Source: Octopus bimaculoides
Lineage: Eukaryota
Reading direction: 5' to 3'
NCBI RefSeq assembly: GCF_001194135.2
Contig: NC_068993.1
Span: 25,951,491-26,015,490, forward strand
DNA: 64,000 nucleotides
Shown piece after piece: positions 27,109 to 33,575 of this stretch; the stretch's first letter is position 1; every line of letters begins with the position of its first letter. The notes beneath the pieces were generated by a model that saw nothing but the letters and a program-made list of their open reading frames with translations, was not told the origin of the DNA and made no database searches. Made by a program: the position numbers and the translations under genes.

Positions 27109-28746
27109 TTATGTGGTGAACTCAAATCGCCAAGGGTGGGCCTTAATTTTGTGCAATCGAAGTGCATCTGATCGCTTGCAGTTCTTGCCACAAATTTCAC
27201 ACGTAAATAGAACAAGGCCTGCACAAGTCTTTTCATGCCGATTTTTATTTGTTCGAAATGTAAATGCTGCACCACACACTTTACACAATGACCGGTTATG
27301 CTCACGCTGGCTATGAGCTTCGAAGATGCCCCAGTTCTGAACTTCGAATGCACAGAAACTGCACTGAAAGTGCCCTCTTTCGTTGAAATTTGGTTTTTGG
27401 CTAATTTGGTTGCGATTATGCTGACTGGCTGATGCTCTGACTTTCCGAGACAATGCAGAGCCAAACAGCTGTGATGACATAGAAAACTTAGAAGCAGCTC
27501 GCTGAAGGGTTACCTCGTATGTTGACTTTACAGTACCACTGGACTGTACTTGGAAATTTGGAGAGGTTGAGTCTAATGGGGGGAAAGTAAGGACAGAAGA
27601 AGACTGGCTCTGCTGAATAGGTGAGCTATTTGGCAAACTATCAGCATGCTGACTTAAATCAACACCTTCTAAATTCATGTCGGATTGACCGTTCATGTTT
27701 TGGCTATTTTCATAGCCATTATCTGGTGGCTCTGGCTTGACAACAACTTCAAAATCTGGGCTTTGTTGTTCAGAGGACATGTCATTTGAGGCAGCAGAAC
27801 CATCTGCTCTTAGTGAAGTCTCTGAGACGGAGGACAAAGCAGTTTCATTCTGCGTGGAGTTTTTCATCTGCATATTCTCTGTGGTTTCATGATGACTTGC
27901 AAAAACATTCATAACCCGACTAGCTTCAGATTGGATCTGCTGTTTCCCACAAAATCCTGAACGTAAGTGATTGCGTAGGTGGCTATGGCTCCGGAACATA
28001 GCACTACACATCATGCATTTTGTAAATCGTCCTCTCTGCGATTGCAAAACGGAGGAACGGATTTTGTTCCGTTTTGAACTAGTTAGTAACTTTCCCAAGA
28101 TTGAACCCTGACCCGATGCGGATGCTGCTGAGGCAGCATGAGCTGAATGAAAGCTGGGCATTATTGCAGATCCTGATGAAAACTGAGAGCTGCTACTTTG
28201 AAGTCTCATTGATGTCTCACTTTGGAGTCGCATTCTACTTTCAGACTCGATGGTGTCAGGGAAAGCAGTTGCTCCATAAGAATTCTGCAAATGTAAGTTG
28301 TTCTCTGCAACAATGCGGCAGCTTTCATCCTTAACCCCAGGGATGTCAAGGACGGAAGAGATTTCTTGAGCAGATTCATTTCCATAGGAAAGTTCACGTT
28401 GGTTGGCATTTGAGGAAACAGATCCATCAATGCCATTGCTCATTGCATAGCTTGGATCATGCCCATTCTCCTGGCTAGACTGAGCCTGGCAGTGATTGAA
28501 GTGGTCATCATGTCTTACAGAGTGGACTGATGACTTTGGACAATTGTTCTTTGATGTGCTACTAATGCTGACGTTTCTAAGTTTCTCATGGATCTTTACA
28601 ACAATCTGATTGTCGGGTTCCTCAGTAGCAATACAGATGATACCATCAATTTCAAGGCGGCTACTATGCTCCGAATCTAACTGCTCACAGCACAGCTTTA
28701 TGACGGCATCATAGATGAGTTTGTTCAATTTCAGTTGGCCAGCCAT
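27109..28746 (-). CDS. C2H2/C2HC zinc-finger transcription factor, 545 aa, single coding exon
   Basis: Only long non-repetitive ORF in the window. First ATG at 28746 (AAG ATG GCT); the track start at 28767 is a GTG. TAA at 27111-27109. Four C-x2-C-x12-H-x3-5-H/C fingers: CMMC..H..C (~27948-28017) and a triplet CSFC..H..H, CKVC..H..C, CEIC..H..H (27136-27363). S/Q/N-rich linkers. Confidence 0.92.
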   Translation of the reverse strand: MAGQLKLNKLIYDAVIKLCCEQLDSEHSSRLEIDGIICIATEEPDNQIVVKIHEKLRNVSISSTSKNNCPKSSVHSVRHDDHFNHCQAQSSQENGHDPSYAMSNGIDGSVSSNANQRELSYGNESAQEISSVLDIPGVKDESCRIVAENNLHLQNSYGATAFPDTIESESRMRLQSETSMRLQSSSSQFSSGSAIMPSFHSAHAASAASASGQGSILGKLLTSSKRNKIRSSVLQSQRGRFTKCMMCSAMFRSHSHLRNHLRSGFCGKQQIQSEASRVMNVFASHHETTENMQMKNSTQNETALSSVSETSLRADGSAASNDMSSEQQSPDFEVVVKPEPPDNGYENSQNMNGQSDMNLEGVDLSQHADSLPNSSPIQQSQSSSVLTFPPLDSTSPNFQVQSSGTVKSTYEVTLQRAASKFSMSSQLFGSALSRKVRASASQHNRNQISQKPNFNERGHFQCSFCAFEVQNWGIFEAHSQREHNRSLCKVCGAAFTFRTNKNRHEKTCAGLVLFTCEICGKNCKRSDALRLHKIKAHPWRFEFTT

Positions 28747-28792
28747 CTTTGCAGGAGAAGAAATCACAGCCAGACTGGTAAGAAACCCAGGA

Positions 28793-28821
28793 CTGCAAAT
28801 AGAGAAAGTAAAAGGTTAGAA
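28793..28821 (-). promoter_or_regulatory. 3' splice acceptor of the ZNF coding exon (exon starts 28792, 46-nt 5'UTR portion)
   Basis: Minus strand reads ttctaac (branch-point-like, 28821-28815), then cttttactttctctatttgcAG|tcctggg; AG at 28794-28793. Confidence 0.75.
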
Positions 28822-29281
28822 TAAGGAAATAAGGAAATATAAGGAAACAAGCATCACAGTCAGACAATAGGTACCACACACACACACACACACACACGCA
28901 TACATACACATATCAAATGGAAAGGAATTAAAGGATTGCATTGGTAGGTAAGAGTTGTATAGAGAGAAGCAGTGCAATGAAAATGTAGGGACAGAGAGAA
29001 GGAATATATTGATGTTTTGACAATAAATAAATGTTACAGAAGTGGGTAATGAGAATGTAGAAACAAGAGGGCTACACAAAACAATAGATAAGGAGTACTT
29101 GTGGTACAAATGTGAGAGAGACAGTCAGACAGACTGAGACAGAAGCATAATATTCTCTAAAGTGAAAGCTTCCCCAACTGTTTAAGATCAATCAACATAG
29201 AGTGTGGAGGATGTCGAAAATGTTGAAAATATGAATTTGCTAAGGTAAAGATTGTATAAATATGATAAATATAGACTAAAA

Positions 29282-29950
29282 TTAGTAATTAGCAGTCATG
29301 GCCTGGAATTTGGAGCACTTATTTTTTGCATGTATGTCTATATGTCCACTCAGTGGAATATGTCTAGTACTGGGGTCTTGTATTTGTTGTTGGTGAATGA
29401 TCAGTCTATTTCTTAGAATAAGCTTTGTTTGACCTACGTAATCTTCATTACATCCTTCACATTTGATAGCATATATTAAATTCCTTGAAGAACATGTAAA
29501 GTGATTCTTTATGGTAAAAGTCTGTTCTGATTTGAATTTGTATGTTGTGTCTTCAGTAAGGCTGATGCAGATCCCACAACAGGGGTGGCCACACTTTTTG
29601 ACTGTCGGTGTAGGAATTGTGGAAGGTAATTTTGCACTTGTGAGGAATATTTTGAGGGTTTTTGATTGTCTTTTACTTTTGATTGTTTTGTGTATTTCAA
29701 ATGCTTGTTTCATTCTTGGGTCTTGTTTTAGTAGTGGGATATTCCGGTGGATAATATTGTAAACCTCTGTTTTCTTCGGTTGTGTTGTAAGAAAGGGTAG
29801 AATATTGGATGTATCTGGAGCATTTTTTGTAACTCTTCACTATTTATTGCTTTGGCATGTTCTATTCCGTTGTCTATTAGCATTAGTGGATATTGTCTTT
29901 TAAGTAGTATTTGCTTTAGTTCCTAGAGTCTTTTATTGTGAGTTTCAGGG
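29282..29950 (-). mobile_element. Penelope-like element fragment: linker and GIY-YIG endonuclease
   Basis: CGHPCCGIC and FTCSSRNLIYAIKCEGCNEDYVGQT..LRNRL..H motifs; upstream RQYPLMLIDNGI and LPFLTT. ORF ends before the downstream conserved Glu and Asn. Confidence 0.88.
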
Positions 29951-31243: not shown

Positions 31244-31273
<30 letters not shown>

Positions 31274-31297
31274 AATACATACATACATATACAATGC

Positions 31298-31334
<37 letters not shown>

Positions 31335-31344
<10 letters not shown>

Positions 31345-31725
31345 CAAACTGCAGTGCCACATGGTAGTGAGATGTGGGTCTTGAATGCAGGCGATATGCA
31401 AAGACTAAAAAAAGTGAAACTGGTAAGCTCTGCTGGATGTGTAATGTCAGGGAACATGTGCAACAGAGCACTAGAGTATTAAGAAAAAAGTTAGGCATAA
31501 GATGAATTATATGTAGTGTGCAAGAGAAGAGATTGCACTAATTTGGTCATGTGATGTGGATGGATGAGGACAGCTGCATAAAAAAGTGGAGGGAAGTTGT
31601 GGAAGAGGGTGACCTAGAAAGACATATGACAAAGTATCAAAGGCCAATCTCAAAACACTGAGCCTTATGAAGGAGATGACAGTTGACTGAGATATATGGT
31701 GCATTGGTATACTCAAGAACCTCAC
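31335..31725 (+). mobile_element. RTE LINE fragment (post-RT region)
   Basis: CIQTAVPHGSEMWVLNAGDMQRL and FGHVMWMDEDSCIKK match the same region of the 59-60 kb RTE. Confidence 0.8.
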
Positions 31726-31988
31726 CACCACCACCACCATCACAACAGAATTGATATACTAAAACCAAGGTGTAACACAAAAAGCACTGGTGGTCATGGA
31801 GCCATGTAAAAAGTAGCCTTCAACTAACGGGTTATATATATATATATATNNNNNNNNNNNNNNNNNNNNNNNNNNNNNNNNNNNNNNNNNNNNNNNNNNN
31901 NNNNNNNNNNNNNNNNNNNNNNNNNNNNNNNNNNNNNNNNNNNNNNNNNNNNNNNNNNNNNNNNNNNNNNNNNNNNNNNNNNNNNNNN

Positions 31989-33110
31989 CATCACAACATA
32001 TTTCAACAATGTGGAAATTTTATTCATCAAAGTAAGTACCATTACAATCAACACATTTTTGCCAAGTTACAAATTTGTTTATTCCAGTAGCATAAAAGTC
32101 TGGAGTTCTGGAACTGATGAACTCTTTGAATGCATATTCAGCATCAGTTTGATTTTCAAACTCCTCTCGCAGGAAATTATCAAGGTGCTTGAAAAAGCGG
32201 TAGTCGGTAGGAGAAAGGTCTGGGGAATAAGCTGGGTGGGGAAGAACTTCATAGCCAAGTTCCCTCAACTTCTGGAGCGTCCTTAGTGGAATGTGTGGTC
32301 GAGCATGAAAAGTGATTGGCCCTCTTCTGTTGACCAGTCTGGGATGGAGGAGTAGCAATTTTTCATTCATTTTGGAAATTTCATGGCAATATGTATCTGC
32401 AGTAATGGTTTTTCCAGGTTTTAGGAAGTTATAGCAGATGAGTCCAGCAGTACACCACCAAACAGTTACCATAACCTTCTTTTTGAAGAGCTCAGGTTTA
32501 GGGAAAGTTTTCAATGCTTCATTTTGGTCCAACCACAGTGAAGGATGTTTTTATTATTGTACAGAATCCATATTTCATCGCAAGTTACAATATGGTCGAG
32601 AAATGGATTGGTCTGGTTACGGAGAAGAAACAACGAACAAATTTCGCATCTGCACATTTCTTGATTTTCACTCAAATCGTGTTGCATCCATTTGTCAAGC
32701 TTTTTTGATTTTCTGATCGCATGCAAATGGTTGCAGGCAGTTTTCTGGCTAACATGAAGTTCTTTTGCCAGTTCTCAAGCGGTTTTACGTGGACTTTTTT
32801 CAATGGTGGTCTTTAATTGACTGTCATCGATGACAGACAGGCGTCCACTATGCTCACGATCTTCAAGGCTCAGGTCTTACTTAAACCACTTTTGAGTCAA
32901 CCACTCACTGGTCATTTCCCTCACAAAATGTTTCGTTGATATCGCAAACAGTTTCAGCTGCTTTACATCCTTTTTTGAAGTTAAATAGCAAAATTGCTTG
33001 AATATTACACTTTGACAGTTCCATTTCAGTTGATTGTAGCAACGGTGAAAAAAATATCGATGTTAATTCATTGATGCATTTGGGCAAGTCTATGTCTGTA
33101 TTATGAGACA
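31989..33110 (-). mobile_element. Second mariner relic (Hsmar1/cecropia-like), transposase pseudogene 32020-33024
   Basis: MELSKCNIQAILLFNFKKG N-terminus; IVTCDE; KKVMVTVWW; PHPAYSPDLSPTDY; WQKCVDCNGTYFD C-terminus. The HDNARPH Asp is lost and there are frameshifts. One end abuts an N-gap, so TIRs cannot be verified. Confidence 0.85.
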
Positions 33111-33506
33111 ATTACAAAAAAAAAAAAAAAAAAAANNNNNNNNNNNNNNNNNNNNNNNNNNNNNNNNNNNNNNNNNNNNNNNNNNNNNNNNNNNNNNNNN
33201 NNNNNNNNNNNNNNNNNNNNNNNNNNNNNNNNNNNNNNNNNNNNNNNNNNNNNNNNNNNNNNNNNNNNNNNNNNNNNNNNNNNNNNNNNNNNNNNNNNNN
33301 NNNNNNNNNNNNNNNNNNNNNNNNNNNNNNNNNNNNNNNNNNNNNNNNNNNNNNNNNNNNNNNNNNNNNNNNNNNNNNNNNNNNNNNNNNNNNNNNNNNN
33401 NNNNNNNNNNNNNNNNNNNNNNNNNNNNNNNNNNNNNNNNNNNNNNNNNNNNNNNNNNNNNNNNNNNNNNNNNNNNNNNNNNNNNNNNNNNNNNNNNNNN
33501 NNNNNN

Positions 33507-33575
<69 letters not shown>
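33507..33575. repeat. (GA)n microsatellite
   Basis: Read directly; abuts an N-gap. Confidence 0.95.

What the first reader, a model, noticed from the sequence alone, without database searches (positions are those of the whole stretch)
28579..28746. Compact ~56-aa N-terminal domain on the zinc-finger protein, a candidate lophotrochozoan analogue of KRAB/ZAD/BTB
Seen: MAGQLKLNKLIYDAVIKLCCEQLDSEHSSRLEIDGIICIATEEPDNQIVVKIHEKL is ordered and hydrophobic-patterned (amphipathic helix with LC, then strand-like LEIDGIICI and QIVVKIHE), unlike the low-complexity sequence after it. It does not fit BTB, KRAB, SCAN or ZAD patterns. From memory it resembles an N-terminal motif of mollusc and annelid ZNF proteins (helix-LC..F/L-x-I-x-G-x-I/L-x-I..V-x-I-x-E), for which I know no established name or function; this is unverified recall. 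Inference: a lineage-specific oligomerisation or co-repressor-recruiting module defining a ZNF family.
Basis: partly seen in the sequence, partly recalled or inferred. Interest (0 to 1): 0.7.

Follow-up and report, generated by a model that had tools for sequence, protein, structure and literature searches.

The report
New N-terminal domain of spiralian zinc-finger proteins
The first ~56 residues of this octopus zinc-finger protein form a real, strongly conserved small folded domain that recurs at the N-terminus of mollusc and annelid zinc-finger proteins, matches no described domain or solved structure, and most likely mediates protein-protein contacts such as self-pairing.

Summary
Window 28746..28579 (-) encodes MAGQ...HEKL, the true N-terminus of a single-exon 545-aa protein with four C2H2-type fingers.

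- **Conservation in cephalopods:** residues 1-63 are almost unchanged while the next 20 codons are free to vary (27 synonymous / 1 non-synonymous codon differences, against 2 / 14).
- **Relatives:** an exhaustive phmmer scan of 1.84 billion proteins found 22 more distant clusters (36-55% identity). All carry the motif at the extreme N-terminus. Named sources are Octopus/Argonauta, the bivalve Sinanodonta, and the annelids Owenia (at least 7 genes on one chromosome) and Ridgeia.
- **Partner domains:** mostly C2H2 arrays, often with a shared C-terminal triple finger; once a pogo-type DDE_1 transposase domain.
- **Structure:** AlphaFold2 on the 23-sequence alignment gives a confident helix plus beta-hairpin (pLDDT 84.5).
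- **Known families:** Pfam, PDB sequence search and Foldseek (PDB, BFVD) give nothing significant, so KRAB, SCAN, BTB and ZAD are excluded.
- **Function (inferred only):** the distal hairpin is hydrophobic on both faces and the helix C-terminal half has a second hydrophobic stripe. I favour a homo-oligomerisation module; cofactor recruitment is the main rival.

It appears to be an undescribed domain family of a known kind. Interest is moderate.

The parts
28579..28746 (-). N-terminal domain as flagged (aa 1-56). The conserved core is aa 7-56 = 28579-28728.
   Evidence: Translation. Family alignment A2 and per-column conservation. Profile hit at E=4e-23, the only one in the window.
28681..28743 (-). 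Predicted amphipathic alpha-helix (aa 2-22), containing the invariant C19 in the 'LKLC' motif.
   Evidence: AlphaFold2 on the 23-sequence alignment: pLDDT 84.5, helix 2-22. Positions 7, 10, 11, 15, 16, 18 and 19 are hydrophobic in 96-100% of members (23 lies just past the helix).
28627..28659 (-). Predicted beta-strand 1 (aa 30-40), 'LEIDGIICI'. D34 and C38 are invariant; E32, G35 and I36 are nearly invariant.
28576..28608 (-). Predicted beta-strand 2 (aa 47-57), 'QIVVKIHEKL'. K51 is invariant and H53 nearly invariant. It pairs with strand 1 as a hairpin.
27109..28746 (-). Complete single-exon CDS (545 aa plus stop) of the zinc-finger protein that carries the domain.
   Evidence: ORF list. Identical or near-identical database proteins from Octopus and Argonauta named 'zinc finger protein 236(-like)'.
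28747..28794 (-). 46-nt 5'UTR part of the coding exon (28747-28792) plus the inferred splice acceptor AG (28793-28794). The upstream exon or exons are non-coding.
   Evidence: Sequence. Spliced and genomic contigs of a related species define the homologous junction and show an in-frame stop upstream of the start. A weak blastn match links L001 upstream to window 28759-28799.
27949..28023 (-). Isolated central zinc finger (aa 242-266, C244/C247/H260/C266).
   Evidence: Pfam zf-met / zf-C2H2_jaz stretch 244-263. Invariant in cephalopods.
27136..27369 (-). C-terminal triple zinc finger (aa 460-537), with an unusually short linker between fingers 1 and 2 (H-x4-H-x4-C here; x2-3 in most relatives). 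It is homologous to the triple-finger module of many other family members.
   Evidence: Pfam zf-C2H2. blastp of this segment against family members: 29-37% identity over 73-85 aa, E 1e-10 to 4e-15.
27718..27741 (-). Conserved 'VKPEPPDN' (psi-K-x-E-P) SUMO-consensus-like motif in the disordered middle region.
   Evidence: Invariant K337/E339/P340/P341 in cephalopods. psi-K-x-E..P motifs number 15 against 3.4 expected across family members.

Best explanation
Residues 1-56 (core 7-56) are an autonomously folding N-terminal domain of about 50 residues. It consists of one amphipathic helix packed on a two-stranded beta-hairpin.

The domain heads a family of mollusc and annelid C2H2 zinc-finger transcription factors. 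The typical layout is domain, long disordered linker with SUMO-type motifs, then zinc-finger clusters including a shared C-terminal triple finger.

Shown:
- The domain exists.
- It is under strong purifying selection.
- It is always N-terminal.
- It is found in two phyla.
- It has been combined with different C-terminal modules: varied C2H2 arrays, a tandem self-duplication, and a pogo-type DDE transposase.
- It has no detectable relative among described domains or solved structures.

Inferred: it works as a protein-protein interaction module, most likely by self-association into a dimer or higher oligomer.
- One hairpin face (L31, I33, G35, I37, I39, I48, V50, I52, L56) would pack on the helix.
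- The other face stays hydrophobic at its distal end (I36, C38, V49). Together with a second hydrophobic stripe on the C-terminal half of the helix (I16, C19), continued by L23 just past it, it would be buried against a second copy.
- The invariant charged cluster E32/D34/K51/H53 would form a cross-strand salt-bridge network or a specific contact patch.

Self-association would bring two sets of zinc fingers together. The protein could then bind paired sites or bridge DNA, as ZAD, BTB and SCAN do for other zinc-finger families.
For: Existence and constraint:
- Exact peptide on the minus strand, with a true N-terminus.
- aa 1-63 invariant except L5V in cephalopods.
- 27 synonymous against 1 non-synonymous codon differences in the domain, and 2 against 14 just after it.

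Family:
- 22 distant clusters, all with the domain starting at residues 4-30.
- Profile E-values of 1e-21 to 6e-13 for further short members.
- Named taxa are Octopus, Argonauta, Sinanodonta, Owenia and Ridgeia.
- In Ridgeia the domain ORF sits directly upstream of, and in frame with, a long ZNF ORF.

Modularity:
- C2H2 arrays of 1-17 fingers.
- DDE_1 fusion in one continuous ORF.
- Two tandem copies in Owenia P0016.

Fold:
- pLDDT 84.5, pTM 0.66; helix 2-22, strands 30-40 and 47-57.
- The shallow full-length model gave a similar helix-plus-strands topology (three strands rather than two; low confidence) and nothing ordered afterwards.

Oligomer inference:
- 20 of 50 core positions are hydrophobic in at least 96% of members.
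- Runs 36-39 and 48-50 are hydrophobic on both strand faces.
- The C-terminal half of the helix is hydrophobic at wheel angles from about 0 to 160 degrees.

No known family: Pfam, PDB sequences, Foldseek PDB best E=3.6, BFVD best E=0.81. No description was found in the papers searched.
Against: - No multimer prediction or experiment was available, so self-association is inferred from hydrophobic patterning only.
- AlphaFold2 was confident for a monomer, so the fold may not need a partner.
- The invariant polar residues (E32, D34, K51, H53) and two invariant cysteines would fit a heterologous partner-binding surface, or possibly an inter-subunit metal site, equally well.
- The strand register used to assign faces comes from the DSSP summary, not from coordinates.
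- The family is small, and single-copy in cephalopods, unlike classical expanding effector-domain ZNF families.
- The remote-homology search used a single sequence, and no profile search against Pfam/PDB70 (HHpred) could be run.
Confidence: 0.5

Rival explanations
1. The domain does not self-associate. It is a docking module that recruits a heterologous cofactor (co-repressor or co-activator, chromatin enzyme, or SUMO/ubiquitin machinery), as KRAB recruits TRIM28. The invariant E32/D34/K51/H53 patch and the exposed hydrophobic strip form the binding surface.
For: - The invariant polar cluster lies on one hairpin face.
- The position is strictly N-terminal and the domain combines with unrelated DNA-binding or transposase modules. 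This is the pattern seen for KRAB in host-transposase fusions such as POGK (established knowledge).
- AlphaFold2 is confident for a monomer.
- SUMO-type psi-K-x-E motifs are enriched in the linkers, as is typical of repressors.
Against: - No partner is known.
- About 40% of the core is invariably hydrophobic and the distal hairpin is two-faced hydrophobic, which suggests a larger buried interface than a peptide-docking site.
- Tandem duplication of the domain in P0016 fits a self-pairing unit.
Confidence: 0.27
2. It is a very divergent member of an already characterised domain superfamily. The relationship is below the sensitivity of the searches that could be run here.
For: - Only HMMER-level sequence searches and Foldseek on one AlphaFold model were possible.
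- Small alpha+beta units are hard to match.
- There are weak, non-significant echoes: the PKA RI-alpha dimerisation/docking helix (E=0.088, helix only) and the E2F-DP coiled-coil/marked-box as top Foldseek hit (E=3.6, TM 0.29). Both are dimerisation modules.
Against: - All 23 members fail every Pfam model at E<=10.
- The profile against PDB sequences gives nothing below E=0.09.
- Foldseek finds nothing at E<=0.001 in 350,542 PDB chains or in BFVD.
- No AlphaFold DB library was available, so cellular predicted structures were not compared.
Confidence: 0.12
3. It is a metal-binding or nucleic-acid-binding module, for example an unconventional Cys/Cys/His(/Asp) zinc site built from C19, C38, H53 and D34, possibly shared between two subunits.
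For: C19, C38, D34 and K51 are invariant and H53 is nearly invariant across two phyla. Invariant Cys and His in a nuclear protein often mean metal ligation.
Against: - In the predicted topology C19 (helix C-terminal end, near the base of the hairpin) and C38 (near the hairpin tip) should be far apart within one chain. This is inferred.
- There are no CxxC or HxxxH spacings.
- AlphaFold2 folds the domain confidently without metal.
- The cysteines sit in fully hydrophobic columns, consistent with core packing.
Confidence: 0.07
4. It is not a functional domain: a chance hydrophobic pattern or a mis-annotated start.
For: None beyond the prior that short N-terminal segments are often unstructured. 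The O. vulgaris model starts 21 residues earlier.
Against: - There is an in-frame stop upstream in transcripts of a relative.
- Purifying selection is extreme.
- Cross-phylum homologues have database-wide significant E-values.
- The structure prediction is confident.
Confidence: 0.01

Closest known systems
ZAD (zinc-finger-associated domain, Pfam zf-AD PF07776) of insect C2H2 proteins
   Same: - It is a compact N-terminal domain on C2H2 proteins, separated from the fingers by a disordered linker.
- It is restricted mostly to one animal clade.
- ZAD acts as a homodimerisation module (established knowledge), which is the function I infer here.
   Different: - ZAD is about 70-90 aa and is built around a zinc ion held by two CxxC pairs. 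This domain has only two isolated invariant Cys and no CxxC.
- There is no Pfam hit.
- ZAD families are large (about 90 genes in Drosophila). This family is small.
SCAN domain (PF02023) and BTB/POZ (PF00651) of vertebrate ZNFs
   Same: Both are N-terminal oligomerisation modules attached to C2H2 arrays. SCAN is also found in transposon-related contexts.
   Different: - SCAN is all-helical (about 80 aa) and BTB is about 95-120 aa alpha/beta. This domain is one helix plus a hairpin in about 50 aa.
- There is no sequence or structural match.
KRAB (PF01352) and KRAB-transposase fusions such as POGK
   Same: It is an N-terminal effector on C2H2 proteins. The same domain is also found fused to a pogo-type DDE transposase (P0015: domain + DDE_1), paralleling KRAB-pogo fusion genes.
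   Different: - There is no similarity to the KRAB A/B boxes.
- TRIM28, the KRAB partner, is a vertebrate protein (established knowledge).
- No cofactor is known here.
FiNZ domain of cyprinid fish ZNFs (Wells et al. 2023, PMC10547256)
   Same: It is a recently recognised, lineage-restricted N-terminal ZNF-associated sequence without similarity to known domains. This is a precedent for the category.
   Different: - FiNZ is 28 aa, glutamate-rich, and heads about 700 rapidly evolving genes in zebrafish.
- This domain is about 50 aa with a hydrophobic core and is slowly evolving, in a small family.
E2F-DP coiled-coil/marked-box heterodimerisation domain (PDB 5tuv, 2aze)
   Same: It is the top-ranked Foldseek target. 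There a long helix followed by beta-strands from each subunit assembles into an intermolecular coiled coil plus beta-sandwich, which shows how a helix + hairpin unit could dimerise.
   Different: The match is not significant (E=3.6 and 9.2, TM 0.27-0.29, rmsd about 15 A). It is an analogy only.

Membership tests
ZAD (zf-AD, PF07776) | Match to the zf-AD profile. | tested here: not met
   hmmscan of the window peptide and of all 23 aligned family members against Pfam-A at E<=10: no zf-AD hit.
ZAD (zf-AD, PF07776) | Four zinc-coordinating cysteines arranged as two CxxC pairs. | tested here: not met
   Only C19 and C38 are invariant. No CxxC pair is conserved in alignment A2.
KRAB (PF01352) | Match to the KRAB A-box/B-box profile. 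| tested here: not met
   No hit for any of 23 members at E<=10.
KRAB (PF01352) | Binds TRIM28/KAP1 and represses transcription. | not testable with these tools
   Requires an interaction or reporter assay.
SCAN (PF02023) | An all-alpha domain of about 80 residues (five helices) that matches the SCAN profile. | tested here: not met
   No Pfam hit. The predicted secondary structure is one helix plus two long beta-strands.
BTB/POZ (PF00651) | An alpha/beta fold of about 95-120 residues that matches the BTB profile. | tested here: not met
   No Pfam hit. The conserved, ordered region is only about 50 residues. No BTB structure appears among the Foldseek PDB matches.
FiNZ (cyprinid fish) | A 28-aa glutamate-rich N-terminal sequence on cyprinid ZNFs. 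| not tested
   No FiNZ model or sequence was at hand. Length, composition and taxon differ according to the description in PMC10547256.
Generic class: N-terminal self-association domain of C2H2 proteins | Located N-terminal to C2H2 fingers, separated by a linker, and recurrent across paralogues and orthologues. | tested here: met
   All 22 distant hits carry the domain at residues 4-30 onward, and most have 1-17 C2H2 fingers downstream.
Generic class: N-terminal self-association domain of C2H2 proteins | Forms homo-oligomers. | not testable with these tools
Hydrophobic patterning is suggestive, but that is inference.
PKA RI-alpha dimerisation/docking domain | A helix-turn-helix X-type four-helix bundle with a significant sequence match. 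| tested here: not met
   The profile match covers 19 residues of one helix only, at E=0.088. The rest of this domain is beta.

The most novel reading that the evidence does not exclude
[quoted passage not shown] On this reading it is an obligate dimerisation module that pairs widely spaced zinc-finger clusters, giving architectural or looping transcription factors as ZAD does in insects. It is modular enough to have been captured by a pogo transposase to make a host-transposase fusion gene. That would make it the lophotrochozoan counterpart of ZAD/SCAN/KRAB.
Probability: 0.3. Interest if true: 0.6.

Novelty: new variant of a known kind. Interest (0 to 1): 0.45.

Why it matters
C2H2 zinc-finger proteins are the largest transcription-factor class in animals. 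Their behaviour is largely set by their N-terminal partner domains: KRAB, SCAN and BTB in vertebrates, ZAD in insects, FiNZ in carp-like fish. No equivalent is described for molluscs and annelids, although cephalopods have very large C2H2 repertoires.

A defined, conserved, foldable 50-residue module gives:
- a handle for a new Pfam-type family;
- a way to classify an otherwise anonymous 'ZNF236-like' group;
- a concrete construct for dimerisation, partner-finding and reporter experiments in spiralians.

The fusion to a pogo transposase suggests the same domain-capture process that built vertebrate KRAB-transposase genes also operates in this clade.

The family is small and its function is unproven, so this is a solid annotation-level discovery rather than a surprise that overturns anything.

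Tried and rejected
- **Plus-strand reading of the coordinates:** contains a stop and is unrelated.
- **Word-index homology search with the 70-aa N-terminus:** found nothing, not even the identical orthologues. This is a limitation of the index for short queries, not evidence of absence.
- **Upstream coding exon.** I considered that the AG directly before the ATG (caaAG|ATG) might be an acceptor joining an upstream coding exon. I rejected this:
  - Transcripts of a relative splice 46-48 nt further upstream and have an in-frame stop before the start.
  - The 21-aa longer O. vulgaris model (P0007) simply reads through this UTR and the intron.
- **Full-length AlphaFold2 on the 5-sequence cephalopod alignment:** unusable (mean pLDDT 31.8; even the fingers were not modelled). 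It did give a similar helix-plus-strands topology for the N-terminus.
- **PDB sequence searches** with the single sequence and the profile gave only noise. The PKA RI-alpha D/D helix resemblance (E=0.088) covers one helix, so I treat it as convergent.
- **Foldseek against PDB and BFVD:** nothing significant.
- **Intramolecular C19/C38/H53 zinc site:** judged unlikely on predicted topology.
- **Terminal inverted repeats around the domain-DDE_1 ORF** (L004), which would show an active transposon: none flank it. There is only an unrelated palindromic element upstream.
- **Naming the unnamed cephalopod and ENA/Logan sources** via run accessions in the literature: no hits.
- **Literature searches for a described mollusc/annelid ZNF-associated domain:** nothing found.
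Full report
**1. The observation**

The finding's coordinates are right, but the feature lies on the minus strand. Translating 28579-28746 on the plus strand gives an unrelated peptide with a stop. The reverse complement gives exactly MAGQLKLNKLIYDAVIKLCCEQLDSEHSSRLEIDGIICIATEEPDNQIVVKIHEKL.

This peptide heads a long minus-strand ORF, 27109..28767. Counted from the ATG at 28746, the ORF encodes 545 aa in one exon. Pfam finds only C2H2-type fingers: one central (aa 244-263) and a C-terminal cluster (best stretch 514-537). It finds nothing on aa 1-56, even at E<=10.

**2. Whether it is really the N-terminus**

An AG lies immediately before the ATG, so an upstream coding exon had to be excluded. 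Contigs carrying an 82-83% identical cephalopod orthologue (P0003) settle this.
- One contig (L001) is genomic, reading ...tttgcag|GTATGG....
- Two (L002, L003) are spliced transcripts with different 5' exons joined at that same junction.
- All three have an in-frame TGA 21 nt upstream of the start (MMAGQ).

The homologous acceptor in the window is tatttgcAG|TCC (AG at 28793-28794), which leaves a 46-nt 5'UTR in the coding exon. The RefSeq model for Octopus sinensis also starts at MAGQ. The 21-aa longer O. vulgaris model reads through the UTR and intron.

**3. Constraint**

The window protein is identical to a database protein. It clusters at 96% identity or more with proteins from Octopus sinensis, O. 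vulgaris and Argonauta hians named 'zinc finger protein 236(-like)'. Three further cephalopod clusters are 80-84% identical.

In the five-sequence alignment, residues 1-63 are invariant except L5V, and the following segment is variable. At the codon level against L001:

| Codons | Synonymous differences | Non-synonymous differences |
|---|---|---|
| 1-63 | 27 | 1 |
| 64-83 | 2 | 14 |

 The protein sequence of this segment is therefore under very strong purifying selection.

**4. Relatives elsewhere**

The word-index search fails on so short a query. An exhaustive phmmer scan of aa 1-70 against 1.84 billion cluster representatives found 23 proteins at E<=1e-3. These are the cephalopod cluster plus 22 distant ones (36-55% identity, E 1.4e-6 to 7.9e-4). 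In every one the match starts at residues 4-30 of the protein.

A profile of these N-termini (alignment A2) gave the following:
- It retrieves further short members at E 1e-21 to 6e-13.
- It scores the window ORF at E=4e-23.
- No other ORF in the window scores.

The sources that carry names are:
- Owenia fusiformis, an annelid, with at least seven genes all on contig CAIIXF020000002.1;
- Ridgeia piscesae, an annelid;
- Sinanodonta woodiana, a bivalve;
- the cephalopods.

The remaining hits come from unnamed ENA/Logan/JGI assemblies. No named hit lies outside Mollusca and Annelida. Because the search was single-sequence, more distant members elsewhere are not excluded.

**5. Family anatomy**

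The consensus is L..L.Q.S.LKLC......F..sLE[IV]DGI[IV]C[IV]S......QIVVK.HE. C19, D34, C38 and K51 are invariant. E32, G35, I36 and H53 are nearly invariant.

Downstream partners vary.
- **C2H2 arrays.** Most members carry 1-17 C2H2 fingers.
- **Shared triple finger.** Many members share with the window protein a homologous C-terminal triple finger with an unusually short linker between fingers 1 and 2 (H-x4-H-x2-3-C; x4 in the window protein). Identity is 29-37% over 73-85 aa, E 1e-10 to 4e-15. The layout 'domain - disordered linker - triple finger' is therefore probably ancestral; P0044 shows the same layout.
- **Tandem domain copies.** Owenia P0016 has two tandem copies of the domain.
- **Transposase fusion.** P0015 joins the domain to a pogo-type DDE_1 transposase domain in one uninterrupted 679-aa ORF. 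No flanking inverted repeats are present.
- **Split annotation in Ridgeia.** The domain is annotated as a separate 99-aa gene. It is followed 22 nt later by a ZNF gene model, with a single TAA between them in the same frame.

**6. Structure**

AlphaFold2 on the 23-sequence alignment gives mean pLDDT 84.5 and pTM 0.66. It predicts a helix at 2-22 and a beta-hairpin at 30-40 / 47-57. A shallow full-length run was poor overall, but it showed a similar helix-plus-strands topology for the N-terminus (three strands rather than two) and no order immediately after it.

From the symmetric hairpin I infer the pairing i+j=87.
- One face (L31, I33, G35, I37, I39, I48, V50, I52, L56) is wholly hydrophobic and presumably packs on the helix face formed by L7, L10, I11, A14, V15 and L18.
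- The other face carries the conserved charged cluster E32/D34/K51/H53 proximally.
- Distally that face is still hydrophobic (I36, C38, V49).
- The C-terminal half of the helix has a second hydrophobic stripe (I16, C19), continued by L23 just past it.

Twenty of the 50 core positions are hydrophobic in at least 96% of members. A 50-residue monomer cannot bury all of this, which is the basis for inferring a protein-protein interface, most simply self-association.

**7. Comparison with what is known**

- None of the 23 members matches KRAB, SCAN, BTB, zf-AD or any other Pfam family at a meaningful level.
- PDB sequence searches give only noise. The best hit is a 19-residue resemblance to the PKA RI-alpha docking helix at E=0.088.
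- Foldseek finds nothing at E<=0.001 in the PDB. The best hit there is the E2F5-DP1 coiled-coil/marked-box at E=3.6, TM 0.29. It also finds nothing in BFVD.
- The literature held here describes FiNZ as a recent lineage-specific ZNF-associated domain (PMC10547256), but nothing for molluscs or annelids.

In position and probable logic the domain therefore works like ZAD, SCAN or BTB, or alternatively like KRAB. It is a member of none of them.

**8. Verdict**

The functional reading is plausible but untested. I rate the alternatives as follows:

| Reading | Confidence |
|---|---|
| Self-association | about 0.5 |
| Heterologous cofactor docking | about 0.27 |
| Hidden membership of a known superfamily | about 0.12 |
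| Metal or nucleic-acid binding | about 0.07 |

The family is small and slowly evolving in cephalopods. It is not a KRAB-scale expansion, and its restriction to Lophotrochozoa is provisional.

It is best described as an apparently undescribed domain family of a known kind, the N-terminal ZNF-associated protein-interaction module. Interest is moderate.

Noticed in passing
L004:4001-6040 (protein P0015; ENA ERZ25069853 contig ctg32771l): The same N-terminal domain is fused in one continuous 679-aa ORF to a pogo-type DDE_1 transposase domain (Pfam E=2.4e-5). The domain is about 80% identical to that of the ZNF protein P0014. No terminal inverted repeats flank the ORF. It looks like a host-transposase fusion or domesticated gene, analogous to KRAB-pogo genes.
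   Followed up: partly
Protein P0016 (Owenia fusiformis CAH1778244.1), aa ~10-56 and ~88-140: There are two tandem copies of the domain ahead of 17 C2H2 fingers. The first copy has a degenerate second strand (QQLAIAKFRNN).
   Followed up: partly
Owenia fusiformis contig CAIIXF020000002.1 (L011 and proteins P0016, P0017, P0024, P0029, P0032, P0033, P0047): At least seven genes with this domain lie on one 35.75-Mb chromosome-scale contig. They include an adjacent pair (CAH1777110/CAH1777111) and a subfamily with the variant 'VVKMHRTI' strand. This is a modest local expansion in an annelid.
   Followed up: no
L010:10001-10300 and 10322 onward (Ridgeia piscesae JAODUO010001155.1): The domain is annotated as a separate 99-aa 'hypothetical protein'. 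A 1217-aa ZNF gene model begins 22 nt later, with a single TAA between the two in the same reading frame. This may be a split gene model, a sequencing error or a recent nonsense mutation.
   Followed up: partly
window 27718-27741 (-), aa 336-343, and homologues: A conserved VKPEPP (psi-K-x-E-P) SUMO-consensus / synergy-control-like motif lies in the disordered linker. Such motifs are enriched across the family (15 observed, 3.4 expected from shuffles; the four cephalopod sequences are not independent).
   Followed up: partly
window 29282-29713 (-): A 143-aa ORF lies about 0.5 kb upstream of the coding exon, in the 5' intron or promoter region. It has a Cys-rich stretch and a weak GIY-YIG match (E=0.0026, below Pfam's cutoff). 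It resembles the endonuclease end of a Penelope-like retroelement.
   Followed up: partly
window 32020-32726 (-): This is a mariner-type transposase remnant (Pfam Transposase_1, E=3e-19), broken across overlapping ORFs.
   Followed up: partly
window ~31830-32030 and ~33140-33520; 28878-28900; 31250-31400: Runs of N (assembly gaps) translate as poly-X in the ORF list. There are several (CA)n / (GA)n microsatellites around the gene.
   Followed up: no
L002:1-1037 vs L003:1-662 (transcripts of the P0003 orthologue): Two different 5' non-coding exons are spliced to the same acceptor, which suggests alternative promoters or 5'UTRs for this gene in a related cephalopod. Neither 5' exon could be located in the window by blastn.
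   Followed up: partly
window 27112-27138 (-), aa 537-545: The extreme C-terminus HPWRFEFTT is invariant in all cephalopod orthologues, directly after the last finger. It is a possible short linear motif, with a loose resemblance to WRPW-type co-repressor tails. This is unverified.
   Followed up: no
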